A DNA stretch of 64,000 bases, from positions 19,902,001 to 19,966,000 of the forward strand of contig NC_087258.1 of the NCBI RefSeq assembly GCF_037042905.1, in the 5' to 3' direction. The position numbers were made by a program, and so were the translations under genes. The notes beneath the pieces were generated by a model that worked only from the letters and a program-made list of their open reading frames with translations, ran no database searches and was not told the origin of the DNA. The DNA comes from Lytechinus pictus. Taxonomy: Eukaryota. Positions 45,632 through 64,000 of the stretch are shown one piece after another; position 1 is the first letter of the stretch; each line of letters starts with the position of its first letter.

Positions 45632-45999
45632 ACACAATTATATAGACAAATTTAACAAATGATAATTATTTACATACAATTTACATTTTAGTTGTAATTA
45701 CTTATTTAATATTATATAATACTTGTTGTAAAACAATTTTCATTATTTATATAATTACCGGTATATATAACTAAAATTTAAATACGGGATTCAAGAGTGA
45801 CTTCATATCTTCTCTGTGAATTTTGGCCAACATGTACCTTGAAGGTTGAATGAAAACAGTGATTCAATTTGTAAAATTCACCTCACAGGGAGAAATAAAA
45901 AGATATGACATCATCACAATTAACTTCAAATTGATCTGTTACCGTTTCTTTTTTACCCCGACAGCTGAAGTTTGTTGTGAAAGCATCACATGAAACAAG

Positions 46000-48900
46000 A
46001 TGGAGGAGGAAAGCTCTGGTGCTGATGCAATGGACAAGGAAGTTACGGTGACCAAAGTTTCTGAGGGATCTGCCGATTTTGTCAGAATTAAGCAAGAAGT
46101 TGACCTGCCAGAAGGTTTGTATTTTTATAAAACCATCCCTAATTGACATATTCATCACAAATGAGTATGGCTTAATACAGAATTTAATGAATCTTCCATG
46201 GATAAAAAGCAGGGTGCTACATAAGCACTTGCCCGATAGCCCTGGGCAAGTAGAAGTTAGAGTTGGGCAAGTGTTTTGAAGTAAAGACCAAACTACTTGC
46301 CCGAAATGGGCAAGCAAAATTCACACAGTAGAATGACCAAAATTAGGGTCAATATGATATGATATTGACCCTAATTTTGGTCATGGCAGGCAAGATAAAA
46401 TCACTTTGGAAAAAAAAGTGCAATAACAAGGTAGATCAGTTCATGTCAAAAGAGAGAAAAAGGTAAATGGTTTATAAAACCACAAAACTTTCTTTTAAAG
46501 AGGTAGACCTTTTTTTTCAAGGATTTTTTCGGGCAAGTGTAGTAGATTTTTTAGCAAGTATATTCCAACTATTTCAGAATTTACTTGCCCGACCGGGCAA
46601 GCGTGTCTAAAAAGTTAAGTAGCACCCTGTAAAAAGGCTTGGCCAGAAGAGACTCAATACCAGCATAGAAAATAGTGCACACATGTATAAAGGCAATGGG
46701 AGATTTTGGCCTATTGACAATGCAAATTGCCCCTAAAATTCACCAAATTGCATGCTTTGGGGCGACCACCATTCAAGAGTCGCATTGAGATTTCCCACAA
46801 ATAATAAGTATGTTAAGACAAATTAATATTCCATAGAACAATAATATTAGCAGTAATGGCATAATTGATAGTGGCATGAAAAGTACAGTGCGGCCATTAA
46901 GGGACAAGTCCACCCCAGCAGAAAGATGATTGGAATAAAAAGAGAAAAATTCAACAAGCACAACACTGAAAATTTTATCAAAATCGGACGTAAAATAAGT
47001 ATGGTAATGAATTTTAAGGTTTTGCTTAATTTCACAGAACAGTTGTATGCACGTCTTGGTCGATATGCAAATGAGTGACTGATGACATCACCCACTCACT
47101 ATTTCTTTTGTATTTTATTATATGAAATATTTTTATTTTCTCCCCCTTCTAATGTGAAACAAAGTTTTATTCTTTCCTGAACATGTGGAGTTGAATTGTT
47201 TTAACATTTTATGGTTCCGCCAAGTTAAAGTTGAATCTGTAGAAACTGAAATATTACATTATTCAAACAATAAAAACAAGAAATAGCGAGTGAGGGATAT
47301 CATCGACTGTCTCATTTGTATATCACTGAGTTGTGCATATAACTCTCGAAACTTTGAAATGTCATAACTTTCTTATTTAACATCCGATTTTGATGAAATT
47401 TTCTGCGTTACTCTCGTTTGATTTTTCTCTCTTGTTTCAAATCGACATTTTTCTGGGGTGGACTTGACCTTCCCCCAAGTTATAAATTGCCCCAATGTGA
47501 AGAAAAAAATAGCCCCTGAAAAAATAACGATATGAATAACGATATGAATTAAGATTTAACATGACTTTCTTTTTATTTCACAAAATCTTTCAGTTAATAA
47601 TGGTCATTATATTATTATGAGTAAGTGTACCAAATTAAAATATCTCATAAAAATATGAAAGAAATGTAGAATTTTCTTGGAAAAAACCTTGGGCAGTCAT
47701 TTTAAGATTGAAAAAAAAAATGGTACCCAATGCCTGCGCACCCTTTCACTTTGCACACGATTCAGGGATTTTGATGAGAAAGTCTGCATTTTATTAAGGC
47801 CGTCACATAAAATGCCCCAAATTCATTGTTTTTCCACGAATTTTGAGTAGGATTTTTAAAAGAATATCTGTCTATGACTTGCATGTGTAAAGTCTGTGTT
47901 CGCTGCGTATCTTCTTTTACTAGAATCGTGCAGATACGCGTGTGCGCAGACAAGGGGGACTGCGCAGACTTGGGGGAACTTGCCATACATTGAGAATAGA
48001 TCCAGTAAAGAATTTCAATCCCTTTAATTTGAATTCCTTTGGGGGGGGGGGGTGGAAGATTTCTTCCATGGATGGTCCGATCAAAGAGACAATTGGTACA
48101 GATACAGATTAACACGAAGGGAACAAGATGATGGTATTATTTCTTAATTCAATTTCTCTTTTTTTTCAATATTTTTTTGTTTAGATGACACATATTACCC
48201 TATGGATTTTGGTATATCGGTTGACGATGAGGAAGAAATGAATCCTGTCTACGTCAATATAGAGCCTGGTTCCTCTGGTAAGTGCATTCAAAATCATGAA
48301 AATGTGTAAATGCATTCAATTTGTGTAGATGGATTTAAGTATGTGTACATGTTAGCGCATTCAAGTTGTGTAGATGCATTCAAATTTGTATACGTGCAAA
48401 TGTGTACATGCATGCATTTTGTGTATTATTATTAGTGCATTCAAATGTGTACACTGTAGATGCATTCATATTTTAATACATGTATGTACAGTTTACAATG
48501 TAAGTGCATTAAGTTATATCTTTGTTGAGCTCATTATTGGTTAATATCCAAATAATGCATGCAGCCGAGTGCGTTAGTGGAAATGCAAAGCATGCAAGGT
48601 TTCTTTAGATAGGTGCTGCACTGTACACGAGCCGCTTGCGGCGAGTGCCCAGTGTGCACCATCTGAAGAAACCGAGCTTTCTCTGCATTTACTCTTACGC
48701 ACAACAGAGCAACTGCATTATTTGTTTTATAAAATAACAACACAGAAACAAATTCTTAAAAATTTACAGTACAGTTTTGTTGGACTTCTACCGCACTGGT
48801 CTGCTTGAGCGTGCAATGTCAATTTTCGTTGCGCACCTTTTGCACTGCCGTGCTTGCATGCGTGCGTCATGTGACGCGTATTGGCCAATCGCAATGCTTG

Positions 48901-51900
48901 AAATAACACACCTATTTTATAACAGCAATTCTTTTGCAATGCAATCATTTCAGTAAACGTGTGCTCTCAACGTCATGATCATGAGGGGCCTTCATATTCC
49001 TTCCTGGTCGATGGGAGTGAAAAAATAAAACTTACAAAAGAATATGATGAATCCAAATCAAAGGGGAGAGTATGAATAAATATGTAGAACTAGTAGTTAG
49101 ATCTTAGGAACTGAGATATTCTCTTAGAATAAGAGAGGAACAAAAAATGTGGAGCGTTGTGGCCCAGTGGATTAGTCTCCGGGCAATAATATCCAAGTCC
49201 TTTGGAAGCGCATAGAGACATTATTCATATTGTGTTACGCGCTATACAAGAACTGATTATTAATCAATTCAGAGTTCTGAGTGAACACATACTTGTCAAC
49301 CGGTCTATCAGGATCAACGTGAAGTAGTCATGTCACAAAAAAGGGTGCACCTTGCCTGCAAGGATTGCGATAAGTGCAAATTTAGTGAATGCTTTTTTGC
49401 AAGGGTGCATATTGCCCTTTGTCCACTACCATCCACTACAATTTTTCTTTTGCTTTTTGACTTGCATGTATAGTACAATGTATATGATTTAAGAAGAATC
49501 CATCTTTCCCCATTGTTTTTTTTTTTTTTTAATAGGTGCACATGAATGTACTATGAATGTACGTTGATAATATTGGATCTTGTGATTCAATCTGCAGGTC
49601 TATGGCATGGCCTTAAGTCAATCGTTCAACATTGTCTATTAGTATAGAGACAAGCTTTAATTTCTAGCCTATATTTTTTTTGTATACATGGTCTGATTCC
49701 AGAAACTTTCCCTTCATGCATGTTCATAATATATATACAGTACGTCAACACTGACACCCTTAGATATTTACACAGTCCTAAGTAATGCTAACCAGTTCAT
49801 GCTTTTGCTCTAATGTGCTCATTAAGACTTTCTCTGAGTTCAGAAGCATACAAGGTCCATACTATGTAGAATATATTAAGCCATATTGATCTTTACATTC
49901 ATACTCAAATAACTCAATTAAAAAAATACATGATGGATTTTTCACAAATCGGTATAATTGACAATGAAATAAAGAGTGCTGGTATGTTTTATTCACCGGC
50001 ACTGCACTAGTCTAGAAATCCTTACACCTACGTGTTGCAGCATCCTTGCGTGACTATGTCACGAGCGGTGTAAAAAAACAAAAAAACAATCGAAGACAAA
50101 TTAGAGCAACAACCGACGTTCCGTCCTCCGAATTCCTACAGAGCTACCCGAAGACGACCCCAAGTCCAGCTCCACCGCAGGGAAGGACAAAGCCAAGGCC
50201 AGGTCTTTGAACTTGAGGAGGGGGAGAAGCAGGAGCAGGTCCCAGTCAGCAAACCTTAATCTTGCCGAGCCGGAGGGTTGGGAATCCGAAGACGGCCTGG
50301 ACGGCTACGTTGCCAGCACCAATGGGGGCCCCCAACCGAAGAAGACCAAGATTTTTTCCAGTCTCTCGAACGCGGAGGAGGAAAGCATGGTGAAGTGGAT
50401 CCGAGAAACGGACTGCCTGTACAACAAGAAACGAATGGATTACAGGGACCACGCCAGGAAAGATGTACTCTGGGCTGCCAAGGCCAAAGAATTGGGGAAG
50501 AAAGGTGATTATAAAATTTGAATTTCACATTTTTACTCTGAATATGTGATGTTATTCACTTGTGATTTTAAGTTTCGCAAATATAATAGAGATTGTTTAC
50601 ACGTAGATGTTTTGCTTCACTTTATGATATTGTTACATGTACATGGTGTATATGTGACCCAAAATATTTTGTTTTTGTTGCAGCCAATATCTTGCAAGTA
50701 TGGTATAAATCAATCCGTACCAGATATGTGAAACTCTCAAGAAAGAAGTCTCGGTGTGGGGTCGCTGATTTGACAGACCGAGATCATTGGATAATGATGA
50801 AATTCAACTTTCTTGCAAAACATATTGGGAAAGTTAGACACAAAACGAATTTCAGAGTAAGTTGATTTTAATTTGCATTTAATGTTCCCTATATGATTTT
50901 GTGATGACGGACATTCTCATGCTCACTCAATTGAGTAGAAGGCCATGTTTACTGATAAGAAGGAAATAGTAAATCCTTTTTTTTAGTATAGAATAAATGA
51001 CAATACTGCGAGTTTTGAAGGTTTGCAACAACAATTAGCAAACTTGTTAATTGAAATACAATGAAAATAATCCGAGTCCCTTATTGTCTCTCGATTGCTG
51101 GACCTTCCTTTGAATACCGCTTTGTCTTTTGTATTTATCAATGTTTTCTATAACTGTGTGTTCATTGATTGATTGATTGATTCAGTCTTTTATGGCTTGA
51201 TTATTTGAATAATAGATGAATTATGATTGGTATGAATAACTCTTTTGAGTCTGTAATACTTGATGTTACAAGATTATTTTCCTAAGTTGACAATAGTACT
51301 CAATTTAATTCAATAAACAAATTTGAAAGCAAGTTGCTCTAGATTTTTATTCTTGATTTGATTTTGATAGTGCCTGGGTGGGTGAGGTGGATATGAAGCA
51401 AAAAGTGATTTTCACTGATAAATATGGTCTAAGCCAATCAGATGCAAGGATTTTGGTAGCTTATAACAAAAGTCAGTAAAAATCACTCTTTGTTTCTTGA
51501 AATGCACCCTGAATTCCCTTTTGCTGATTCACTCTTGCAGACCTTTGCTGTTTATTTCTAGGTGTAGGTGTATCACCATGTTTCAATTTTTTTTCACCAC
51601 CCCCTCTCTCTCCTCCCCCCCCCCCCCACTAGAACACGAGACTTCACAACCAGGTCCACGTACCTCCGACGGTGAATGCAACTGTCAGTATTTGTCCCGC
51701 TCCCAGCTCTCCCCGTGTGTATCAGGAAGGGAGCAATAATGGAGGTCCTGGATTCAAGGAGGAGTCAACGCCCGATGACCACCTGGTTCTCCTTCCGCAT
51801 CCACCCGCTCCTGCTCTTGCTCCTCCTATTCCCTCTTCTCTTGCTCCAGCAATTCCTTCCTCTCTTGCTCCTGCTATTCCTTCCTCTCTTTCCGTCACCA

Positions 51901-54114
51901 ACTTTAGTCCCGGCCCGAATGTAGAGAGCATTTCAAGGGATGCGCTCGAAGGAGGTCCGAGAGCCCAGACAGCAACGGCAGATGGGGAGGCCAAAACTGG
52001 TGGTGTTGCTCAGAGATACGAGCAGTTTGTTCAGGTACATGTAGGCAAAGGGCTTTAGCGAGCACAGTGGTCTCATTTTATTTCATTCATTCTTCATTGT
52101 CAACAAGATAAGCATATGATTTATGATTACAACATGATTTTTGCGGTTCCATTTGACTTTTGATCCGGCAACAATTGCTCCGCTATAAGTTATACAAACT
52201 GATCAAATGACTAACTTTAACCCTGGATTTAACACTACACCTACCATTAACCTAAACTAAGTTTAACATAACCCTAAACCTACCATACATGTAAAACCCT
52301 ATTGAAACTCTAACACTAACCTTATATTTTGGATGTAATAAAGCATGGAGCAGTTTGTCGCAGGAGCAAATGTTGTGTCACTAATTTTCAAAGTCGAAAA
52401 TTGGACATGTAATACCAATTATAAACAGTGAGCACTAATGTTTTCTACACAGACAACTACGTTATGTAAGCATTGGGGTGAATTTGTATCTGCCACTGTA
52501 CCAAGAATGCGCGCGCCACGCATTTTATTATGAAATACAGGTTTTTTGGGAAAATACAGTTTTATCACAGAATACAATTTTTCATCCCCAGAGGTTAGCA
52601 GGTCTGTTGTACATGTATTGAACATACATTTTGTGTAATCTGGTGGCTGTTTCACAAATCTGCAAGTTATGAGCAATTTTACGAATGACAGGGAGCCTTT
52701 CTTGTGTTAAATGATGTACATTAAATTTACATTGATGTTGATCTAGTGCCTAAGAAAGAAACACCAGTCGTTCTTAAAGTTGCTTGTAGCATACAATAGT
52801 TTTATGAAACGCATACCTCATCTAAAGAATTTCTTCGACTTCTAGAAGGATGACTGATGCGAGTTTACCTTTGTTTTTTTTTTGCTCTGTCAATCTGCTC
52901 AGATGCAGGAGAGGGTTCTGATGACCATGCTGCAGCCGAGAGCAGTCAACGAGAGAAGTGCCTTCGGGGATTGGCTGAAGGCTGTCATAGAGGGTTTTGA
53001 TAGGTCGGTCTGGAGAGAATTTCAGATGGAGTGTTCTCAACTGGTGTACAAGTATCAATGTAGGAATGATCAGGTTCTAAGTAGCAATCCAAGTCAACCA
53101 TCAATGTCCTTTGTAAGTTCAAGTAGTCCACCATCTGATGATGCGGCCAGGGTGCCGTTTCATAAAGGTGTTCGCAAGTCATATACAACGTTAAGAACAA
53201 CTGCTGACCAGCACCTAAGAACGTGCTCCAGTCTTACATATACAGTGGTGCTCAAAAGTTAGTGAGCCCCACTCGAAAATGAACATATTTTAGAGTCTTC
53301 AAGTTCTGCCATGTTTTAGATATTTAACTGTGATTTCAGGTAATAAAATATTACATTAAATCGAGTTTGTATCTATGGGCTCACAGAACATTGTAATGAT
53401 GTTGTCTACATTCAACACTCAGCATGAAGGAGTGCATTTTGTGAAGGGGTTCACTAACTTTTGAGCACAACTGTAGTTGTGCATAACTTTATGAACAACT
53501 TTGTGAAACACCACCCTGTCTTTGTTCTGAATGAAGTAATCCAAATTTCTCCCGTTTTGATTTGATGGGAGTGCATTTCTTATAATCCTAATAAAAATTC
53601 GAGGGAAAAAACATAGTGATTTTTCCATTCGAATGCTTGTTCAATAACAGTGTTAATTTGCAAAAATTGAACTACAATTTACTTAATTGGAATCAATTAT
53701 CTGAAAATCTGACTTTGCACCCACTTAAAAGTATAGGTACATTCATATGTAGCTGAAAGGGGAATGAAACCCTGGAACAAGTAAGCTTGTAGTTGTATGA
53801 TACAAGACAATAAAAAAAATGAAGAAATAATAAAGTTATTAGCATTATGTGGACATCCAAGTAGTGTTGACGATATGTGCAAGAATTATGAAGATTAGTT
53901 ACTTACAATCTTGTCTTGGAGTTGTAATGTTAACTTGATTCATGCTGTATTTTTTTTTCATTTCCATACACCACAAACAGGGTCCACACTATTCTTAGGC
54001 AACAAGTTGAGCTGATATCTTTTCTGTCACTTTTTGACTGTGTCATTAATGTTGTTATTTTCTTCTTGTCTACAGTCTGTGGATAATGATGAACAACCAG
54101 AAGGAGAAAGCTAA
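46000..54114 (+). CDS. MADF (Myb/SANT-like) + BESS-like DNA-binding protein; exons 46000-46114, 48185-48277, 50142-50504, 50684-50856, 51633-52034, 52903-53112, 54076-54114; 464 aa
   Basis: All junctions GT-AG with consistent phases (1,1,1,0,0,0) and no stops; in-frame stop upstream of ATG 46000; MADF pattern MVKWIRETDCLYNKKRMDYRDHARKDVLWAAKAKELG..ILQVWYKSIRTRY..W..KFNFLAKHI; BESS-like ERSAFGDWLKAVIEGFDRSVWREFQMECSQLVYKY. Confidence 0.75.
46210..46629 (+). mobile_element. MITE with CAGGGTGCTAC TIR and 7-bp TSD (P-element/hAT-like)
   Basis: TIR cagggtgctac / gtagcaccctg; TAAAAAG at 46203-46209 and 46630-46636; repeated cttgccc/gggcaag motifs. Confidence 0.75.
46901..47470. mobile_element. TTAA-site MITE (gggacaagtccacccc / ggggtggacttgacct)
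   Basis: Terminal inverted repeats; TTAA at 46897-46900. Confidence 0.7.
47540..47940 (-). repeat. Right arm of the long inverted repeat (pairs with 42264-42718)
   Basis: Reverse-complement homology to the left arm. Confidence 0.8.
49148..49263 (+). mobile_element. Internally deleted SINE (A-box head fused directly to tail type B)
   Basis: tgtggagcgttgtggcccagtggattagtct joined to aataatatccaagtcc...gcgctatacaagaactg as in 58338-58623. Confidence 0.75.
53243..53473. mobile_element. Tc1/mariner-type MITE
   Basis: TA|CAGTGGTGCTCAAAAGTTAGTGA ... TCACTAACTTTTGAGCACAACTG|TA. Confidence 0.85.
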
Positions 54115-54202
54115 CAGTCATCCCTCCGTTGTCAGCAGCCGTATAATCATCTTGAAGTTGACTCTTCTTGCCAATACATCGCTAGACAGCAGTATCAAGA
54201 TG

Positions 54203-54531
54203 CAGGGTTCCTGCAGTCATGGAAAATCGTGGAAAAAGTTGTGGTCATGGAAAGTCAGGGAAAAGTCAGAGAATTTTGAAAATTTGTGAAAAGTCATGGA
54301 ATTCATTTACCTCTTGGCTATGGCAGCTTTCCAGTTTGTTGTGTCTCGCAACTCTCATACTCTGCTATTATAATTGGTGTTCATGATTTCCATTTTTCCC
54401 AGTTTTGTGACATCCCCAATTCTACATAACTCCCGGGATGTCACGGGAAGTCATGGAAAGCAGCAATTTAGTCATGGAAAGGTCATGGAAAAGTCATGGA
54501 ATTCCATTTTCAAATTTCTGTGGGAACCCTG
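54203..54531. mobile_element. CAGGGTTCC MITE with GTCATGGAA subrepeats, downstream of the MADF stop codon
   Basis: TIR cagggttcc / ggaaccctg; multiple gtcatggaa. Confidence 0.7.
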
Positions 54532-55740
54532 CATCTGAAAGATATGACTCGTTTTTTTAGTGGAGGATGGAGTTAAATTTTTAGAAACGCAGAGAACAGA
54601 AAGACATCAAACAACTCATATCTACCTAGATAAGTCATACACCGATAAGGGAATAGTGTATTTATATGGATCTGGATTCATTTTATTTGTGACAAACAAT
54701 AGACGCATGGTGTGGTCTGTGAAAGGTCTTGTGGTTAAAGCTTTGGACTCATGATCTGCCATTGTCTCCACTTTGATAAAAGGACCCGAGAGTAATTTTT
54801 GTTGTCTATAAGGTCAGCCACTATGCTTGATTAACGTAGAAGTGAAATGTTTCTTATGTAATTGCTTATACCAGCTTGGCGTTCTGCAGCAGAATGCTGC
54901 TCTGCAGTATATTGCTACAGGAGTTTCCGTAACAGAAACAGAAAAAGATAGAGCCAAATAAAGCCATTGTAAGGCAGCAAAGCTGAAGGTGATACTGTTC
55001 TTTGAGATCCTGAAGACATTCCAGACCTTCAGGACGAAATGGCCAATAAATGTATGTCTAAAACTTACCTGACGTGTACCTTGATGATAAGTCCCATGTC
55101 ATTTTCTGTGGACTCCATGGTTAAAACAGCAGCATGAACTAAACAAAAATGATGTGATAATGTGGCTACTTTTAAAACTCTGTGTTCTGATTCTAGGAAC
55201 AATATAGACTGAGGGGATGACTCATTAAGCTTCCTTCAGCTGAGTTTTATTTTTTTAGGTGGTAAGGTGTCCTCTGGGGACCAATGTCAACGGGGGAAAC
55301 CTGCCTTTTGGCCAGCTCTCCTATGTGGTAGATGCTCCAGGGCATTTTCAGTCTTGATGAGAGTTCTGTCGTGGTCTGTCCCAAATATTGTAATTTTTGT
55401 GCTTGATCTCGTCAGTTTGTGCCAGTTTTGTAGGGAACTGCTTGAAATTAAGATTGAAAATCAGTATTATTTCACATCAGTTGCATTTTCCAGTGATTGT
55501 CAAAATATTAGATTTATTGTCACATTACCATGAAATGAAAATGCACTGATTTCATAGTTGAAAGTAGGACTTTTCATGAATTTTTGAAAAAAAATTATAT
55601 GCATGGTTTGTACAGTAGTTTTCATTTGTAAGGTCCTTTCTACTGTAGCTATTGTGAACGCAGTTATAGTGTTTATCTATGTTGCCACTCTCCACATAGA
55701 TGTAGTAAATGGGCACCCGGTAGCAGCACCTGATCAGGGT

Positions 55741-56625
55741 TAGCCTCTTGTCGAGGCCCTGGCGGCTGCTTCCCGAGCGAAGCGAGGGATTTCGCGAATT
55801 AGGCCTGGTGCAAGCCATGGCCTCTTGACATCTGAGCTGAATTATATATTCATGAGGAACGTCTTCCTAATGAATATACATGAGTCATGATATTACCGGT
55901 CACCTAGTAAACCAATGAAATGTCAAAGCTTTTTCGTCCGGGGTTCGGAATACTATAGTCCACTATTCTGCAGGGGATTCATTTAATTGCGGGACACTAT
56001 AAAAGGGGATATAAACAGCAAAATGCTACAAGTAGTGGTACTACTACTGCTACTACTAGTACTGGCCGTAACATGCAGACCGCCCCGAAACTTCTCGGGA
56101 GATACTGGTCAGCCGCTGGTCAGACTCGAGTCAAGAGGAAGCTCCACTACAGCATTTGCTCACTGCACAGCGGAGATCGATAATCGACGCATAGTGGAAT
56201 CGCATGAAAATACATTTTTTCCATATCCTGTGGGTAGATTTACAAAAACATCTTGTCCTTTCAGTGCAGATTTAATTTCATCGACTTGCAAATCCTTAAA
56301 TCGGTCAATATTCAGCATTTTAGAGGCATATTCAATGCTCTTTGATATTTCGTCGTCACTGTTCGCCAAGAATCCACGGGTCGCCATTCAAGATGAGCTC
56401 ATGAATATTCAATATGACGTCATAGCGGCCCGCGCTCTCATTGGATGATTTTCACCGACCAGTTCTTGGTCGGAATATTGGTAAAAACAATAAAAAACAA
56501 AAGAAAGTCGGTGAAATTCGGCCCAGATGTCAAGAGGCCCTGTCTCGCGGCGCTCTGCTTCGCTCTCTCCCTTGCTTAGCCATGTTCGCTCGGAAAGCAG
56601 CCGACAGGGCCTCGACAAGAGGCTA
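55741..56625 (-). mobile_element. AcademH-type DNA transposon deletion derivative carrying a RecQ-like helicase fragment
   Basis: TIR TAGCCTCTTGTCGAGGCCCTG / CAGGGCCTCGACAAGAGGCTA; perfect 9-bp TSD GATCAGGGT (55732-55740, 56626-56634); helicase fragment inside. Confidence 0.85.
56160..56387 (-). pseudogene. Truncated RecQ-like SF2 helicase N-terminus
   Basis: FKDLQVDEIKSALKGQDVFVNLPTGYGK corresponds to motif 0/Q and Walker A of RecQ-type helicases; similarity is lost immediately afterwards. Confidence 0.8.
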
Positions 56626-56705
56626 GATCAGGGTAGACATGCAGAAGCCAGGGTAATATTAGAAACATTGGATTGATAGCTATATAAATGTTGCATATTA
56701 ATATA

Positions 56706-57560
56706 AACTGGGTTCCAAAAGAAACTGATCAAACTTTACAAAGGCACTGCACAATTTCCACTCAGTCAAAGTGAACAATATTTTTATATAGGCTAGCTTC
56801 AATAATGTTTACAAAGCACACATCAATAATCAAAAGATTGGTTCAATAACAGAGGGGCTATAGATAGCCCCTCACATCAATTGGTTTCAGAATCCAAAGT
56901 CACAAAATGGCAAATGAAAGATCAATGAAAATGAGATGCCATTAAACAAACTTCCTATTTTTCATCCTTCATAGTGATTGGCTTGATCACAAAGAAGCTA
57001 CATGTACAGGAAGTTAAACTCAAAGTTTTAAATGACTGGAGCAATCACACAGCCACACACAGATCTCCGGTGATAGCCCGGTAAGCGGGGGATAATCTGA
57101 ACATGGTGTTTTCTGTGTGTGGCTGAGTGAGATACACACAGACACACACCATGTTCAGATTATCCTCATTTACCGGGACATCCCCAGTGGATTTTGTGTG
57201 TGGCTGTGTGATTGGGCACCAGTCATTTAAAACTTTGATGTTAATTTCCTGTAGCTTCTTTGTGATTGAGCCAATCATTAAACATTCCAATGAAGGACAT
57301 GTGTATTAAAGTGGGAAGTTTATTTAATCCCATCTTATTTTCATTGGTCTTTCTTTTGCCATTTTGTGACTTTGGATTCTGAAACCAATCGATGTGAGGG
57401 GCTATAACACCTGTATGATTAAACCAATCTCTTAATTATTGATTTGTGCTTTAATAATGATGATCGAATGTAGCCTGTGTAAATATATTGTTCATTTTGA
57501 CTGAGTGGAATTTGTGCAGTGCCCTTGTAAAGTTTGATCAGCTTCTTTTGGAACCCGGTT
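56706..57560. mobile_element. ~855-bp foldback/palindromic element; half copy at about 23105-23330
   Basis: aactgggttccaaaagaaactgatcaaactttaca / tgtaaagtttgatcagcttcttttggaacccggtt, with arm pairing continuing to the centre near 57130. Confidence 0.85.
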
Positions 57561-57854
57561 GAGGTATTATAAATCAATTTTATATTTGATGATATGATGA
57601 TATGATGGTACATATATGTACAGCTAAAGGGAAATCAATATGTTTGATTGAGAAATGTAAAATTCCAAAGCAAGTATTTACAATTTTAGTTGCATTATTG
57701 CCAATTGAATATGATTTCAATTTTACGTTGTACATTGTATATTCAATAATTCAGTCGAAAGAGGCTTTCCTCATCCTATTTTGGTTATTGATATCCATAA
57801 GCTGGATGGCACCCTGAGGCCCCCATGTGATATTTCCTTCTTTGATAACATGTG

Positions 57855-58143
57855 TGGAGTGTTGTGGCCCAGTGGATTAGTCTTTTGACTTTGAAACAGA
57901 GGGTCGTGGGTTCGAACCCAGCCATGGCGTAATTTCCTTCAGCAAGAAATTCATCTACACTGTGCTGCACTCAACCCAGGTGAGGTGAATGGGTACCCGG
58001 TAGGAAGAAATTCCTTGAATGCTTTGAGCGCCTAGGCAGCCCAGCTAAAACCGGGGTAATAATAATAACAGGGCCCGCTGGGAGAACAGTTTTCAGAACT
58101 GAAGTGGCTTCCCTGGGTAAATATACCTATATTATTATTATTA
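57855..58143 (+). mobile_element. tRNA-derived SINE (tail type A)
   Basis: A box TGGCCCAGTGG, B box GGTTCGAACCC, core, (TAT)n tail. Confidence 0.85.
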
Positions 58144-58337
58144 TCAAATTCCAGAGCAAGTATTTAGTTGCATTATTGTGATTTGAATATGAGTAAATCT
58201 TACCTTGTACATACATGTAGTATATTTAATAATTCAGTCAAAAGAGGCTTTCCTTATCCTATTTTGAGCATCGATATCCGTTAGCTGGATGGCACCCTGA
58301 GGCCCCCATGTGATATTTCCTTGTTTGATAACATGTG

Positions 58338-58623
58338 TGGAGTGTTGTGGCCCAGTGGATTAGTCTTTTGACTTTGAAACAGAAGGTCGTGGGTTCGAAT
58401 CCCAGCTATGGTGTAATTTCCTTCAGCAAGAAATCTATCCACACTGTGCTGCACTCAACCCAGGTGAGGTGAATGGGTACCTGGCAGGAATTTATTCCTT
58501 GAAATGCCACCGCGCTGTAAAAGGCTGTGGGGCTAAATAATATCCAAGTCCTTCGGAAGTGCATAGGGACATTATGACATAATGTGATATGCGCTATACA
58601 AGAACTGCTTTATTATTATTATT
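58338..58623 (+). mobile_element. tRNA-derived SINE (tail type B, L2-like 3' end)
   Basis: Same head and core as 57855; different tail ending gcgctatacaagaactgc(ttat)n. Confidence 0.85.
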
Positions 58624-59030
58624 TTGTATGCCCTTGTCAAGTCAATATTAAATAAAACCTTGTCCCGAGGAAGTCCATGGATACATGTATATCATAAAGA
58701 TTGTCAGCATTGACTAAATTGACAGCACTGACAATTTCAGTGAAATCCTTGGTTTTGAGAGGCACTGTCCTCTGACTGTAACTACCAGAAAATGGTAACT
58801 TATCATTGCTGACAAGCTTCACGATACGTTGCCTTGGGTCTATGAGGCACTCAATAGCTATGGAATTCTACAAAGCAGCATTTATTGCACTTCTTAAATT
58901 CTTATTAATCATGGCTTTTAAAATGAATTGAATAAAAAGTTTATTTTAGTTATAAATGTTTGCATTTATGACCATTGATCAGTATTAGTGGATTTAGTAC
59001 ATGTAGGTCTTCTTGGATAAGTTGTTCATC

Positions 59031-59305
59031 TGGGCCCCGTCTTACAAAGAGTTACAATTGATCCGATCAACCTAAAGTATATGGAAATCCAACAATGTCA
59101 TAATTTTTTTCTCCAGGAAATTCGTACAATGTCCTTTGTAAACAAAGAGAAGCACACTGAATTTTCAAGAAAACATTGGATGCATGATTATTTGTCATAT
59201 CTAGAAAATATTTTGAACAAACATTCATTTTAGATGTAGACGTTGCTGGCTTTCCATAGTTACGATTGATTGGATCAATCGTAACTCTTTGTAAGACAGG
59301 GTTCT
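59031..59305. mobile_element. Palindromic MITE (gtcttacaaagagttac / gtaactctttgtaagac)
   Basis: Terminal inverted repeats. Confidence 0.7.
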
Positions 59306-61218
59306 TATGTCTAATCTACAACATCTTTTCTTTTACAGGGTGCTACAGTATGTTTACCAGTTTTTCATTAACCCCCCCCCCCAAACCATGAGATGGCCTC
59401 TTGCCTATGTGAATAAAATTGATACTTGATATCCACATGGGTGCATGGCTGGTAAAAATATATGTTCTGTTAACTCATTGACTTCTGGAACCTGTTGATT
59501 TCTGTACACAGCCAATGGGAATCACAGAATTCTGTAGTCAATGGATAAACATTTTATTTCTTTTTTATGCATAAATTTTTCCAATGTTATTGTTTTAATT
59601 ATTTGTATGAAGTTTTAGGGGAAAATGTAAATATTAATCCAAGGTGTCAAAATCTTGTTTTTGTATTATCGTATTAAAGTGTCATTGCATATTGAGCAAA
59701 TTTTATGTTTGACATCATTTTCGTTTATGTTTTGATTGTAATATTTAAAAAAAGATATTGTTGTTAAAAATAAACTGAATTGAATAAAGTCAAGTCATCA
59801 AAATTGAATATTTTATTTTATTTTCTTGAACTAATTATTTTTGTCTCCAACATGTACATGTTAACATCATATTGAGAGAACCAGTGACAAAAGTGAAGTA
59901 AAAAGTAGTACACTCAGTTGTTCACTGAGTTGGGCAAGAAGGTCAAATCCTACAATTTCAGCTTCCTTGGCATTATAGGTGGAGTGTTCCGTGTTTTGGA
60001 ATTGAGTTTTCAATCATGATTCATGTTGTTGTTTAAATTTGAAAATCGACATTGAACACACCCGTACCTGTAACAAACTCAAGAATAGAAATGGCAGAAG
60101 ACAAGAAAAAAAAACAAAAACAAAGGTGGACAAGGAGAAAGTTTATTTGAACTATCAGAGAAATTATATCAGTGGAAACATGAATTCTTGTATAGAATTC
60201 ACAAGGCCTGCAATTTGTCTTAAAAGATGTCCTACACGTATAATCATGTGCTAAACTTCAGCATGCTGGTCGTTATCCTTTAAATGTGTATTCTTTCATA
60301 ATACATTTCATGCACTTCAAGGAAGACAAATGGTGCGTATTCTGAAGTCGGGTTGAAGTTAGGCCACATTGGTTTATTTAAAACTATGTATCTACATGTA
60401 CATTGTGGAAAGCTGAAAATGTTAGTCTTGTTTATATTGTATGCTACCTATGTTTACTGTGATTTTTCTCCCTTATAATTTTATGATGGTGAAAATTTAT
60501 TTTGAGTATCATTCCCAGACAGATATGAATGATTTTGGTGTTAATTTTTTAGAAGATGTGCATTAATGAGCTATAATTGGATGAGCCTGCGCCTATAGAT
60601 GTTTTGACAGAAATTGGCGCAATATAAATGATGTGAATCATCATCAAATGTGCAGATGAACTGATCAAGTACCGTCAGAGATTTGTTTCACAATCAGCTA
60701 TCCATACTTCACCCACATCTTTACACCAGATTTCAAAGTAAACCCCAGTTCAGAATTTAGGTCATAATCCCAGAAATGCCAACTCCCTTTATAAAGTATT
60801 TGTTCCTCTTTTTTGCTATAAATACGCCAATACTTTTTTTGTATGATTTGTTACTTTTTTTAAAATTTCTGATCATGGATTATGTATTATACACAGTGCG
60901 TGACACTAGCGCCGATCCGACAGTCCCAGACCAGTAAAAATCACTGTCGGGCCAGTAACTTGTTGCATGAAAAGAACAAGTAAATTTTTGCCTATGAGCA
61001 CATGTTTAAAAGGGTGATGTATCAAGTTTTCAAGTAGAGTAATTTCACATGTTTTTTCACCGATCTCACTACAACAGGCTGGCGATTGTTACGTTGAAAC
61101 AAATAAAAAAAAACCTATTTTTTTGTAAATTTTTTTCCCTCATAAGAATACTTTTTTGGGTTGTAGAAGGTTTGCAGGTCTGTAATCCTTATTATTATAT
61201 CATATCATACTCCCTCAG

Positions 61219-64000
61219 GTATGAAGAGAAGGAGAAAGGAGATCATCTCCTATAAAGAAGAGGAGAGCGAGGAGGAAAGTGAGGAGAGTGAAGAAAACGA
61301 GGAAGACAGCGATGAAGAGTGGTCAAACGATGGAGATGAACAGTCTGAAGAAGAAGGTAAATGAAGTTCTTCCATGATGATGGTGATTGTGAGCATGATC
61401 ATGATTGTAATGATCGTGATGGTGATTGTGATGATTATGATTATGATGATGGCGAATGTGAGAATTATGATGTTGATGGTGATGATGGTGATGATGGTGT
61501 TGATGATGATGATGGTGATGATGATTATGATGATGGNNNNNNNNNNNNNNNNNNNNNNNNNNNNNNNNNNNNNNNNNNNNNNNNNNNNNNNNNNNNNNNN
61601 NNNNNNNNNNNNNNNNNNNNNNNNNNNNNNNNNNNNNNNNNNNNNNNNNNNNNNNNNNNNNNNNNNNNNNNNNNNNNNNNNNNNNNNNNNNNNNNNNATT
61701 AAAAAAAATTGTGAAGGCTTGAGGAATATCCATCAAGGATTAAAAAAGTTATGAGAATTTTGGATTTTTTTTATTTGTGGCGTCATATGCAAGCTGCAGC
61801 TTTCCCATATGTTGTGTCATAAAAAAGTAAATGAAATGTAATTTTCTCAACAAAATGGGAATGGGTTTCATTGTACCTTCAGTATAACAACAGACCAATC
61901 ATTTCACATCCGCTCCTGAAAAAAAATGTGATTAGGAGCCTTTAAAGCATCTAAACTTATGCATTTCATATTACATAACATAGGGGCAGCTGCTTGAATA
62001 TGACGTAACAAATCAAAACTTAAGATTCTTGTACCTTTCTTAATCTTTGATGGATTTACCTCAAATATTATTATCAATATTTAGTCTTGATATTTTTCTG
62101 GTATTTTTATCCAACAAACTTTTTCATCTGGGTGAACTTCCCCTTTAACTCGTTTAAATTACCTTGATACCTTGCAGATGGGGATCAAGAATGGACTGAT
62201 GAGCAGGATGACCCTGCTGACCAGCCTTCTACCAGCGAGTCCACAAGCGCACCCGTGATGACCGATGCGCCACCAGTGGAAATCAAGCAAGAACCTCTGA
62301 GTGATGATGAGGGTATGCGCACACTCCTCCATTTCAAGCTTTTCATATTTATAGCAGTCTAGAATTTTAACCGTAACCAGGCAGAGGTGGGAAGGAGGGC
62401 TGATGAGAGGTTCTACCTCAACATTTTGAGCAATGTTTTTGCGATTCTAAGTTAGCTCTTGCCGTGATGCATGGGAGTAAAGTAAAGAATTATATAACAT
62501 TGACTGGCCTTGAGGGAAACATGAAATACATTGCCTGAAACTGAATCATATTGGCCCAAGTCTTTAGACAAGGGCAATAAATTTGACATTCCCCGAAAGA
62601 AGAGCCAGTCAATATTTTTGTTATAATCTAAATAATGTATCTCAAGCAAAAATCATGAAAATTGAGATATTTCACTCCTAAAATGGAATTCTAATTGTCA
62701 TGTTGAGCATCTAGGGCCTCTGAACCTTACCGTATTGATGTACTAGTAACTGAAATGTTGCGTCCATGGGTTTGTCCTATACGGGATGCAGATCGATTAT
62801 AAGGTATGTTGTTGATGCGCAGATACATATGACGCATATCTCTTTCTGCGCATCCTCAGATGCTCGGATATGAGACCTGGGAAAAAACAAAGGTATATTT
62901 TGTGTCGTCTCTTCATGCAAAGTCGGTACACGCAGAAAGACCAAGCAAAATACAAATAATATCTCTACCTCTTTCCTATATTCATAAAATCTCAGGGAAA
63001 TACGGTTTTGTAAATTATGTCTGATATTGGTAATAATTATGAACATTTAGTTTTGATAGTGAAATGAATTGGTTTTCCACACAAACTTGCATTTTTTTCT
63101 TTTGTATATTGTCCTTTCCAGGCCAACACATTCCTTACCAAGAGGATCCCGACCAATTTGCAGAGAGCTACAAGATGTTAGAATCCTTGCGGAGATCCTG
63201 TGAGCAAGGGGTAGCAGAGAGATCTTCTACAGGTGGCCCCTTGGACAGTAAGTCGCCCCCTCCGTTGCTTGACGTAGATGGAATCAAACAAGAAAGGGTA
63301 GAGGTTATCATTTGCGCAATCTGTGGTGATATGTACAATAACCAGAGTGCTTTTGATGAACACCAAAAAGTTTCACACTTTTCTGTAATAAACCGTCACT
63401 CTGTGGTCGGAGATGAAAGGGGAGTGGAACTCTCCAAGGAGACTGTGGGGAATGACCCAGTCTCTCAGATAGTCAGGTTTGAAGTAGAGGAAGGAGGTTA
63501 TGAGGTATTGGATGAAACAAAGAATGTCCAGAATTCAGTAGATCCAGAGGAAGGGTGGAACCTTAGTGGAAGCCAAGAAATGCCAAGTAACTCCCAATGT
63601 GTACAATCCGAGTCCCGTACTTGTAGATTTTGTAAGAAAGCATGTCCCAACAAGCGTATGTACTTGCTACACTTGAGAACTAAACACAGTGAAGAACTCC
63701 CTTATGAATGTCCAAATTGTAAGGCCAGGTACTTGGAGAAGAGAGACTTGGATAGTTTCAGTCGCACCAGGGCAGGGCGAACTGATAAGGGTGGTAAGGA
63801 CAGAAATATTTGTGAGTTTTGCGGGGACAAGACCTCATATCTTTGCCTCACGTGTGATAAGGAATTTAAAAGCAGATCCAAATTGATAGCGCATCAAAAG
63901 GTGCACAGTAAACACAGACTGTGCTATTGCCATTTGTGTGACGAGTACTTTCCAGATACGCGGCAAACTAGGGAGCATTTAGAGACCCACTATCCTATCA
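61219..64000 (+). CDS. C2H2 zinc-finger protein, partial; exons 61219-61356, 62178-62312, 63122->64000 (runs off the window)
   Basis: Phase-1 GT-AG exons: basic/acidic GMKRRRKEIISYKEEESEEES..., then ...VEIKQEPLSDDE, then an open frame with fingers CAICGDMYNNQSAFDEHQKVSH, CRFCKKACPNKRMYLLHLRTKH, CLTCDKEFKSRSKLIAHQKVH, CHLCDEYFPDTRQTREHLETH. Confidence 0.85.
61374..61536. repeat. (ATG/GAT)n microsatellite abutting an assembly gap
   Basis: Degenerate trinucleotide repeat. Confidence 0.95.
61537..61697. other. Assembly gap (N run)
   Basis: N characters. Confidence 0.99.

What the first reader, a model, noticed from the sequence alone, without database searches (positions are those of the whole stretch)
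46000..64000. Candidate modular transcription-factor locus: one acidic N-terminus, two alternative DNA-binding C-termini (MADF-BESS or C2H2 array)
Seen: exons 46000-46114 (MEEESS...RIKQEVDLPE) and 48185-48277 end in phase-1 donors. Both the MADF module (acceptor 50141) and the zinc-finger module (acceptor 61218) begin in phase 1 and read in frame from that donor. I found no convincing CpG-rich promoter or 5' exon between the MADF stop (54114) and 61219; that interval is transposon debris. The psi-K-x-E SUMO-type motif IKQE occurs in the shared exon and twice in the zinc-finger exons, and FKEE occurs in the MADF branch. Known: Drosophila lola and mod(mdg4) splice common N-terminal exons to alternative DNA-binding exons. 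Inference: the same logic operates here without a BTB domain, with one branch possibly captured from a transposon inside an intron of an older zinc-finger gene. Further variable modules may lie beyond the window.
Basis: partly seen in the sequence, partly recalled or inferred. Interest (0 to 1): 0.75.

Follow-up and report, generated by a model that had tools for sequence, protein, structure and literature searches.

The report
Shared head, alternative DNA-binding tails
In the sea urchin Lytechinus pictus two small 5' coding exons are joined either to a nested MADF-domain module or, skipping it, to zinc-finger exons, so one gene makes regulators with the same head and different DNA-binding tails. 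The arrangement is real and conserved, but RefSeq already models it in another sea urchin, and it is a known way of building genes.

Summary
The MADF model equals RefSeq XP_054768855.2 residue for residue. The N gap lies inside the Z1/Z2 intron.

The window is Lytechinus pictus. RNA junction reads show E1->E2->M1->M2->M3. The E2->Z1 join was not seen directly in L. pictus. It is modelled in L. variegatus and in S. purpuratus, where the MADF and zinc-finger products share one start codon. In L. pictus the E1-E2 RNA contig ends exactly at the E2 donor. Its depth is about 1.6-1.7 times that of the MADF contig, which points to a second continuation.

- The Z1 acceptor is conserved, but ATG 61221 is ATA in S. 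purpuratus.
- All modules sit in the same order in three species, with dN/dS of 0-0.4 (Z3, 41 codons, up to 0.69).
- A third tail, ZB, lies beyond the window.
- BESS is not detected by Pfam.
- A transposon origin for the MADF branch is untested.

Verdict: a real, conserved locus with three alternative tails. It is a new member of a known kind (ZNF112/KRABINER, ZNF451, dADD1, lola-like logic) and is already in RefSeq for S. purpuratus. The scan noted a similar locus elsewhere in this genome (s1-317473). Interest is moderate.

The parts
45965..46114 (+). E1: first coding exon of the shared head (ATG at 46000, 38 codons plus 1 base). It is preceded by 35 nt of 5'UTR and an acceptor at 45963-45964. 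About 113 nt more of 5'UTR come from an exon upstream of 45700.
   Evidence: In one search, contig records 1 and 6 start their match at 45964 with 113 and 85 unplaced letters before it. The E1->E2 joint is seen in 2 contig sets and 13 raw reads. The acceptor is conserved in 3 species.
48185..48277 (+). E2: second shared coding exon (31 codons, phase 1 to 1). Its donor at 48277/48278 is the branch point.
   Evidence: In one search the joint 48277->50142 is seen in 2 contig sets and 9 raw reads, and the E1-E2 contigs of X1 and X2 both end exactly at 48277. Single copy in the genome.
50142..50504 (+). M1: first exon of the MADF branch (basic/acidic linker and first half of the MADF domain).
   Evidence: (joints).
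50684..50856 (+). M2: second half of the MADF domain.
   Evidence: joint 50504->50684; MADF 26.0 bits on the whole protein. It is 100% identical in L. variegatus.
51633..52034 (+). M3: proline-rich, poorly conserved linker; contains FKEE.
   Evidence: (joint 50856->51633 region, with two SNPs).
52903..53112 (+). M4: conserved C-terminal helical module of the MADF branch. It looks BESS-like by eye but Pfam does not detect BESS.
   Evidence: 100% identity to L. variegatus, 79% to S. purpuratus. The same module occurs in paralogues L008 and L009.
54076..54114 (+). M5: last coding exon of the MADF branch, with the stop at 54112-54114. AATAAA/ATTAAA-type hexamers follow at 54957 and 55045.
54115..61218 (.). 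MADF 3' region followed by the interval skipped by the zinc-finger branch. It is repeat-rich: a MITE at 55741-56626, a palindromic repeat at about 56700-57560, and a 415-bp repeat at 60771-61186. No block is conserved with S. purpuratus.
61219..61356 (+). Z1: first exon of the zinc-finger branch (acidic, phase 1 to 1). It has a conserved acceptor. The ATG at 61221 is specific to Lytechinus.
   Evidence: L. variegatus and S. purpuratus RefSeq proteins join E2 to this exon.
61537..61697 (.). Assembly gap inside the Z1/Z2 intron, flanked by a GAT/GGT minisatellite. It has no coding consequence.
   Evidence: Z1 is followed directly by Z2 in all protein models.
62178..62312 (+). Z2: acidic exon with a P-x-x-IKQE-P motif (phase 1 to 1).
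63122..63247 (+). Z3: exon shared by both zinc-finger tails. Its donor (GT at 63248-63249) is either used, splicing to ZB beyond the window (L003:3204-5515), or read through into ZA.
   Evidence: (P0001 joins ...PLDS to QSASS...).
63248..64000 (+). ZA: read-through continuation of Z3, an open frame of about 2000 aa full of C2H2-type fingers. It runs on to a stop at window-equivalent 69121-69123 (L002:6121-6123).
   Evidence: identical to RefSeq product P0068. RNA-like contig sets X1 and X2 hold about 80% of its sampled words.

Best explanation
This is one transcription unit of Lytechinus pictus (G000 C14, + strand). A short shared head is spliced to one of three alternative DNA-binding tails.

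The head is E1+E2, 69 aa. It is very acidic, single copy in the genome, and carries a conserved IKQE SUMO-consensus site.

- Route 1: the E2 donor (48277) joins the nearby M1 acceptor. The transcript ends after M5 and gives a 464-aa MADF-domain protein.
- Route 2: the whole MADF module is skipped as part of a 13-kb intron. E2 joins Z1, then Z2 and Z3.
- Second choice, at the Z3 donor: read-through gives the 2160-aa ZA zinc-finger protein. Splicing 13 kb further on to ZB gives a 972-aa classical C2H2-array protein.

Shown: the exon structure, the E1-E2-M1-M2-M3 junctions in L. pictus RNA, the same architecture and isoform models in two other sea urchins, and purifying selection on every module.

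Inferred: use of E2->Z1 in L. pictus itself; that the route is chosen by competition between the M1 acceptor plus MADF-branch polyadenylation and skipping; and that the head acts as a common effector or regulatory module (SUMO acceptor or acidic activation region) delivered to different DNA targets.
For: - Exon models are in frame, and two of them reproduce RefSeq products exactly.
- One search shows GT..AG joints 46114->48185, 48277->50142 and 50504->50684, plus the joint 50856->51633 (tabulated as 50856->51639, GT..CG, because two SNPs sit beside the acceptor), in two Logan contig sets and two stranded raw RNA runs.
- The E1-E2 contig ends exactly at 48277 in both X1 and X2. It overlaps the MADF contig by k-1 letters. 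Its depth is 80.3 against 51.7 in X1 and 20.7 against 12.1 in X2. This is what a graph branch at the E2 donor would give, with roughly 40% of the flux going elsewhere.
- Raw-read joints point the same way: E1->E2 13 reads, E2->M1 9 reads.
- only two protein clusters in 1.84 billion representatives carry E1, one MADF and one zinc-finger.
- L. variegatus LOC121427583 isoforms X1-X3 start with E1-E2 and go on to Z1. S. purpuratus XP_030842562.1 (zinc finger, isoform X1) and XP_011679192.2 (MADF, LOC100889019 isoform X2) have the same N-terminus.
- both S. purpuratus products start at the same base.
- Logan 1.7-kb contigs encode a full E1-E2-MADF protein of 471 aa, so they are spliced mRNA.
- the exon order is identical in three species.
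- dN/dS is 0-0.41 for every module but Z3 (41 codons, 0.52-0.69) in both comparisons, with no stops.
- the Z1 acceptor is conserved, and ATG 61221 is ATA in S. purpuratus.
- the M5-Z1 interval has no block conserved with S. purpuratus, and its only CpG-rich bin is a young MITE.
Against: - The 48277->61219 junction was not displayed for L. pictus. Loose ends at 48277 fell below the listing cut, and the single read-laying run could not also cover Z1.
- L. pictus RefSeq models the MADF gene and the zinc-finger gene separately, with the zinc-finger CDS starting at ATG 61221. Its newest release even splits ZB off as a 739-aa product.
- Depth differences between contigs can also come from coverage bias.
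- The contig break could in principle come from a minor alternative acceptor.
- RefSeq models are predictions. I did not see their RNA support.
- A search for short protein fragments spanning E2-Z1 found nothing.
Confidence: 0.85

Rival explanations
1. There are two neighbouring genes, as in the L. pictus RefSeq annotation. A MADF gene owns E1-E2. A separate zinc-finger gene has its own promoter in 54115-61218 and starts translation at ATG 61221. E2->Z1 joins are rare read-through (conjoined-gene) products.
For: L. pictus RefSeq products P0068 and P0001 start at MKRRRK. ATG 61221 has a purine at -3. The E2->Z1 junction was not directly seen.
Against: - Z1 begins at a canonical, conserved acceptor, so some upstream exon is required.
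- S. purpuratus has ATA instead of the ATG and no Met in Z1.
- Every zinc-finger isoform of L. variegatus and S. purpuratus starts with E1-E2.
- The interval has no conserved non-coding block and no CpG island apart from a MITE.
- The E1-E2 contig has excess depth and breaks at 48277.
Confidence: 0.1
2. This is an annotation artefact. Gnomon fused neighbouring genes in S. purpuratus and L. variegatus, and the shared phase is a coincidence.
For: Phase agreement has about a 1 in 3 chance per acceptor. The isoform models differ between annotation releases.
Against: The same fusion appears in two species and in two S. purpuratus loci or haplotypes. The head is among the best conserved parts of both proteins. 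The L. pictus RNA graph branches at the E2 donor.
Confidence: 0.03
3. The tails are joined to the head by trans-splicing of separately transcribed RNAs, as at Drosophila mod(mdg4).
For: None specific.
Against: All modules lie on one strand, in transcript order, within about 33 kb, so ordinary cis-splicing suffices. No internal promoter signal was found.
Confidence: 0.02

Closest known systems
ZNF112/KRABINER and other host-transposase fusion genes (Cosby et al., 10.1101/2020.05.07.082677)
   Same: The 5' exons of a zinc-finger gene are spliced either to the ancestral zinc-finger exons or to a different DNA-binding module sitting in an intron. Both transcripts coexist.
   Different: Here the nested module is a five-exon MADF gene body with conserved introns. 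It is not a recognisable transposase, and no KRAB or other known effector domain sits in the head. A transposon origin is not shown. The nested module lies upstream of, not within, the last intron.
ZNF451 zinc-finger versus LAP2alpha isoforms (Abascal et al., PMC4495291)
   Same: A short shared N-terminus carries either a C2H2 array or an unrelated C-terminal domain, through alternative splicing. The alternative isoform is under purifying selection.
   Different: No sequence similarity between the sea urchin head and any PDB chain (none at E<=10). I recall from memory, unchecked, that the PDB holds the ZNF451 N-terminal peptide. The weak PF23107 hit is below cut-off. The alternative tail here is a DNA-binding MADF domain, not a retrotransposon GAG-derived domain.
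Drosophila lola and mod(mdg4)
   Same: Common 5' coding exons are spliced to alternative 3' exons that encode different DNA-binding modules.
   Different: No BTB domain in the common part. There are three tails rather than about 20-30. The tails belong to two different domain classes. There is no evidence of, or need for, trans-splicing.
Drosophila dADD1 isoforms (PMC10671109)
   Same: Alternative splicing decides whether a shared N-terminal part carries MADF domains.
   Different: dADD1 switches between MADF repeats and no DNA-binding tail behind an ADD domain. Here MADF alternates with C2H2 arrays behind an unclassified acidic head.

Membership tests
MADF domain proteins (Pfam PF10545) | Match to the MADF profile above Pfam's gathering score | tested here: met
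   P0067 scores 26.0 bits and S. purpuratus P0082 scores 28.9 bits against a cut-off of 22. The domain is split over M1 and M2, so M1 alone scores only 18.3 bits.
MADF-BESS proteins | BESS motif (PF02944) C-terminal to MADF | tested here: not met
   No BESS hit for M4 or the C-terminal 95 aa, in either species or in two paralogues, even at E<=10. A conserved helical C-terminal module exists but is unclassified.
C2H2 zinc-finger proteins | Multiple C2H2 fingers above Pfam cut-offs | tested here: met
   ZB form P0001: zf-C2H2 106 bits. ZA form P0068: zf-C2H2_4 127 bits and zf-Di19 66 bits.
lola / mod(mdg4)-type loci | BTB/POZ domain in the common N-terminal exons | tested here: not met
   No Pfam family matches E1-E2 or Z1-Z3.
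lola / mod(mdg4)-type loci | Large array (about 20 or more) of alternative 3' DNA-binding exons | tested here: not met
   Only three tails were found (MADF, ZA, ZB). No further finger ORF lies up to 29 kb past the window end.
lola / mod(mdg4)-type loci | Common 5' exons joined to alternative DNA-binding 3' modules | tested here: met
lola / mod(mdg4)-type loci | Trans-splicing of the variable exons | not testable with these tools
   This needs allele-specific or long-read RNA data.
Host-transposase fusion genes | The alternative module derives from a transposon-encoded protein | tested here: inconclusive
   The genome holds at least 20 other MADF loci. One family has 6 copies at 92-98% identity, which looks like mobile or recent duplication. 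The closest paralogue (45%, C2) is single copy. The branch has five exons with conserved introns, and I did not look for terminal repeats flanking it.
Host-transposase fusion genes | Parental and fusion transcripts coexist through alternative splicing | tested here: met
   RefSeq isoforms in S. purpuratus share one start. MADF mRNA contigs exist. L. pictus junction reads support the MADF route.
ZNF451 family | N-terminal tandem-SIM region similar to ZNF451 | tested here: not met
   phmmer of the head against all PDB chains gave no hit at E<=10. That the PDB includes the ZNF451 N-terminal peptide is from memory, not checked here. PF23107 scores 20.7 bits against a cut-off of 30.

The most novel reading that the evidence does not exclude
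The 69-aa head is a previously unclassified, portable effector module. It is acidic and carries an invariant IKQE site and a DDTYYPMDFGISV-acidic stretch that might bind or accept SUMO. On this reading the locus is a long-lived (about 50 My) intermediate of DNA-binding-domain capture by alternative splicing in a non-vertebrate deuterostome. A nested MADF gene came to use the head of an older zinc-finger gene, or the reverse, so that one effector is sent to MADF-type and C2H2-type target sets in a regulated ratio.
Probability: 0.2. Interest if true: 0.55.

Novelty: new member of a known kind. Interest (0 to 1): 0.4.

Why it matters
The locus shows that the 'one head, exchangeable DNA-binding tails' design exists in an echinoderm. 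There it switches between two unrelated domain classes (MADF and C2H2) and has been kept for the whole Lytechinus-Strongylocentrotus divergence (about 50 My, from my own knowledge).

The practical point is about annotation. The current L. pictus RefSeq splits the locus into two or three genes and starts the zinc-finger proteins 70 residues too late, if the reading here is right. Expression or knock-down studies aimed at E1-E2 would hit all three products.

The mechanism is ordinary alternative splicing and polyadenylation, and S. purpuratus RefSeq already carries both isoform classes under one gene. The finding is therefore useful rather than surprising.

Tried and rejected
1. **Direct view of the 48277->61219 junction.** Loose ends at 48277 were not among the rows shown, because repeats swamped the list. 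This is unresolved, not negative.
2. **Short protein fragments spanning E2-Z1** (P0072:1-205). No hit in the allowed length range. This is uninformative.
3. **BESS motif.** Not found in three Pfam scans, so I dropped the label.
4. **ZNF451 orthology.** The lead came from a weak PF23107 hit and the shared 'short head, alternative tail' design. No similarity between the head and any PDB chain, and the Pfam hit is below cut-off, so I rejected membership.
5. **An internal promoter.** The CpG-rich bin 56000-56499 turned out to be a MITE with at least 40 copies, absent from the orthologous place in L. variegatus. I rejected it as a conserved promoter.
6. **Transposon origin of the MADF branch.** Paralogue counts are suggestive only, so this stays open.
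7. **Literature.** No paper mentions LOC100889019. A search on MADF and sea urchin found nothing relevant.
8. **The head as a family-wide domain like KRAB.** E1 and E2 match only this locus in the genome.


Full report
**What the window is.** A DNA search of the window's own assembly places it at G000:C14:19902001-19966000. Exact protein look-ups identify the species as Lytechinus pictus: RefSeq XP_054768855.2 lies on a contig of 28,770,610 bases, the length of C14.

- E1 (coding 46000-46114) ends in phase 1.
- E2 (48185-48277) is phase 1 to 1.
- The MADF branch is M1 50142-50504, M2 50684-50856, M3 51633-52034, M4 52903-53112 and M5 54076-54114. All have AG/GT sites. Read from the E2 donor it gives 464 aa, identical to XP_054768855.2.
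- The zinc-finger branch is Z1 61219-61356, Z2 62178-62312 and Z3 from 63122. It also reads in frame from the E2 donor. Without E1-E2 it is identical to the RefSeq product P0068.
- Pfam finds MADF above its cut-off on the whole protein (26.0 bits against 22; 28.9 bits in S. purpuratus). It finds strong C2H2 signals in the zinc-finger tails.
- Pfam finds no BESS motif in any scan, so 'MADF-BESS' should read 'MADF plus an unclassified conserved C-terminal module'.

**The gap.** The N run 61537-61697 lies in the Z1/Z2 intron, next to a GAT/GGT minisatellite that probably broke the assembly. All RefSeq proteins of three species pass from the end of Z1 directly to the start of Z2. No reading frame crosses the gap. 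I did not try to fill it.

**Beyond the window.** I fetched 29 kb downstream.

- The exon that starts at 63122 stays open for about 2000 codons, to a stop at window-equivalent 69121-69123. I call this ZA.
- A second finger exon, ZB, lies at 76204-78515 (L003:3204-5515).
- RefSeq P0001 (L. pictus, 903 aa) shows how ZB is used. An internal donor in the first exon (GT at 63248-63249) defines a 126-base exon, Z3, which splices to ZB.
- The zinc-finger branch therefore has two tails, and the locus has three.

**Do both branches use E1-E2? Evidence from proteins.**

- A phmmer search of E1 alone against 1.84 billion cluster representatives found exactly two proteins. One is a 463-aa MADF protein and one a 2146-aa zinc-finger protein, both beginning with E1.
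- The zinc-finger protein is L. variegatus LOC121427583 isoform X2. Isoforms X1 (2147 aa) and X3 (970 aa, the ZB form) also begin with E1-E2 and continue into Z1.
- In S. purpuratus, XP_030842562.1 (zinc finger, isoform X1, 940 aa) and XP_011679192.2 (MADF, 'LOC100889019 isoform X2', 465 aa) have the same first 73 residues.
- In the fetched S. purpuratus locus both products start at the same base.
- A second S. purpuratus scaffold repeats the pattern, with isoforms X2 and X3 on one 766-kb scaffold, the MADF form named LOC105445385.
- Logan contigs of only 1.66-1.74 kb encode a complete 471-aa E1-E2-MADF protein, so that mRNA is real in a strongylocentrotid.
- By contrast, L. pictus RefSeq treats the MADF gene and the zinc-finger gene as separate and starts the latter at ATG 61221. 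Its newer release also splits ZB off as a 739-aa product.

**Evidence from L. pictus RNA.** Contig sets X1 and X2 are about 95-100 million letters each. They are RNA by the tool's guess and hold about 80% of the ZA words. I laid them, with stranded raw RNA runs X15 and X16, on 45700-51699.

- GT..AG joints are seen for E1->E2 (two contig sets, 3+10 reads), E2->M1 (two contig sets, 6+3 reads) and M1->M2. M2->M3 is also seen, but is tabulated as 50856->51639 (GT..CG) because two SNPs sit at its edge.
- Raw reads lie almost only with the first mate on the minus strand. That fits a plus-strand RNA in a dUTP-type stranded library.
- E1 starts at an acceptor at 45963-45964. The contigs carry 113 and 85 further 5' letters that lie outside the stretch.
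- The E1-E2 contig ends exactly at 48277 in both X1 and X2. It overlaps the MADF contig by 30 letters (k-1).
- Its depth is 80.3 against 51.7 in X1 and 20.7 against 12.1 in X2.
- No contig covers the intron just after E2 (depth 0 at 48300-48499).
- In a compacted de Bruijn graph such a break means the last word of E2 has more than one continuation. The depth gap suggests about 36-42% of E2-containing RNA goes somewhere other than M1.
- I could not see where it goes, because loose ends at 48277 were not among the rows printed.
- This step is therefore inference, backed by the orthologues.

**The alternative: an independent start for the zinc-finger branch.**

- Z1 begins at a canonical acceptor whose polypyrimidine tract and 'tcag|GTAT' are conserved in all three species. 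Some upstream exon must be joined to it.
- The ATG at 61221 is ATA in S. purpuratus, and that species has no Met anywhere in Z1. A start there cannot be the conserved state.
- Between M5 and Z1, blastn against S. purpuratus finds no colinear conserved block (one 94-nt match falls in a repeat), while every exon is found.
- The only 500-base bin with preserved CpG (56000-56499) belongs to an 885-bp element with about 40-nt terminal inverted repeats. It has at least 40 scored copies at 87-95% identity and is missing from the orthologous place in L. variegatus.
- A palindromic repeat (about 56700-57560) and a 415-bp repeat ending 32 bases before the Z1 acceptor are also multi-copy.

**Conservation.**

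- tblastn shows the same order in L. pictus, L. variegatus and S. purpuratus: E1, E2, M1-M5, Z1, Z2, Z3/ZA, ZB.
- Nei-Gojobori estimates give dN/dS of 0-0.41 for every module in both comparisons, apart from the 41-codon Z3 (0.69 and 0.52), with no stop codons.
- M2 and M4 are identical in protein between the two Lytechinus species.
- E1-E2 is 82% identical to S. purpuratus, as well kept as the MADF core.
- E1 and E2 match nowhere else in the L. pictus genome.

**Origin of the MADF branch.**

- The genome has at least 20 other MADF loci.
- One family has six copies at 92-98% identity on five contigs (C17, C12 twice, C25, C5, C1), which looks mobile or recently duplicated. Its members also carry the M4-like C-terminal module.
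- The closest paralogue (45% in the MADF domain, on C2) is single copy.
- The branch here has five exons with conserved introns.
- Capture of a nested MADF gene by the zinc-finger gene's head, or the reverse, is plausible. A transposon origin is neither shown nor excluded. Outgroup genomes were not within reach of the tools.

**Comparison with known systems.** The logic is known.

- Cosby et al. (10.1101/2020.05.07.082677) describe KRABINER. A mariner inserted in the last intron of ZNF112 is spliced to the upstream exons while the ZNF112 transcript persists. They report that most young fusions of this kind coexist with the parental transcript.
- Abascal et al. (PMC4495291) describe ZNF451, whose alternative isoform replaces the fingers with a retrotransposon-derived LAP2alpha domain.
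- Drosophila dADD1 isoforms differ by C-terminal MADF domains (PMC10671109).
- lola and mod(mdg4) share the head-plus-variable-tail design. They differ in having a BTB head, dozens of tails and, for mod(mdg4), trans-splicing (PMC13490949).
- The present locus fails those defining features and should not be filed as lola-like in the strict sense.
- No paper in the searchable library mentions the S. purpuratus gene.
- Another follow-up of this scan judged a similar locus elsewhere in this genome to be one more case of a known way of building genes (s1-317473). I did not test that locus.

**Verdict.** My confidence is about 0.85 that E1-E2 heads all three products in L. pictus. The finding is a new member of a known kind, and public annotation of a sister species already carries it. 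Its main value is as a clean, conserved deuterostome example of switching between MADF and C2H2 DNA-binding tails, and as a correction to the L. pictus gene models.

Noticed in passing
window 49148-49219: A short element in the E2-M1 intron has very high RNA depth on both strands. Hundreds of reads run off it into tRNA-like letters (loose ends ...GGGTCGTGGGTTCGAAT), and many molecules begin at 49219. It looks like a tRNA-derived SINE or a tRNA-like repeat.
   Followed up: no
window 47347-47410 (wider repeat 46900-47500): A repeat in the E1-E2 intron has contig depth in the tens of thousands. Raw reads lie mostly with the first mate on +, so it appears to be a highly expressed repeat family transcribed antisense to the gene.
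   Followed up: no
window 55741-56626: An 885-bp MITE-like element with about 40-nt near-identical terminal inverted repeats and preserved CpG. It has at least 40 scored copies (728 candidates) at 87-95% identity and is absent at the orthologous place in L. variegatus. It contains a DEAD/RecQ-like ORF fragment on the minus strand (weak Pfam hit).
   Followed up: partly
window 60771-61186: A 415-bp interspersed repeat (at least 25 copies at 86-89%) ends 32 bases upstream of the Z1 acceptor. It is shared with L. variegatus.
   Followed up: partly
window 45990-46025: An upstream ATG 10 bases before the main ATG opens an 11-codon out-of-frame uORF that overlaps the start. It is present in both Lytechinus species but is GTG in S. 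purpuratus.
   Followed up: partly
L008 (G000:C17:8444653-8446489) and five other places: A two-ORF MADF gene (MADF plus an M4-like C-terminal module) occurs in six copies at 92-98% identity on five contigs (C17, C12 twice, C25, C5, C1). This suggests a mobile or recently amplified MADF family in L. pictus.
   Followed up: partly
L002:248-6123 (window-equivalent 63248-69123): The ZA tail is produced by not using the Z3 donor, and it is a 2000-aa exon. S. purpuratus aligns over only 741 of 1956 codons, at 31% identity, so this tail evolves much faster than ZB or the MADF branch.
   Followed up: partly
RefSeq models of L. pictus (P0001, P0068, P0071): Successive RefSeq releases model this locus differently. 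ZB is first isoform X2 of the zinc-finger gene and later a separate 739-aa gene starting inside the ZB exon. None of the L. pictus zinc-finger models seen here (P0001, P0068, P0071) carries E1-E2.
   Followed up: yes
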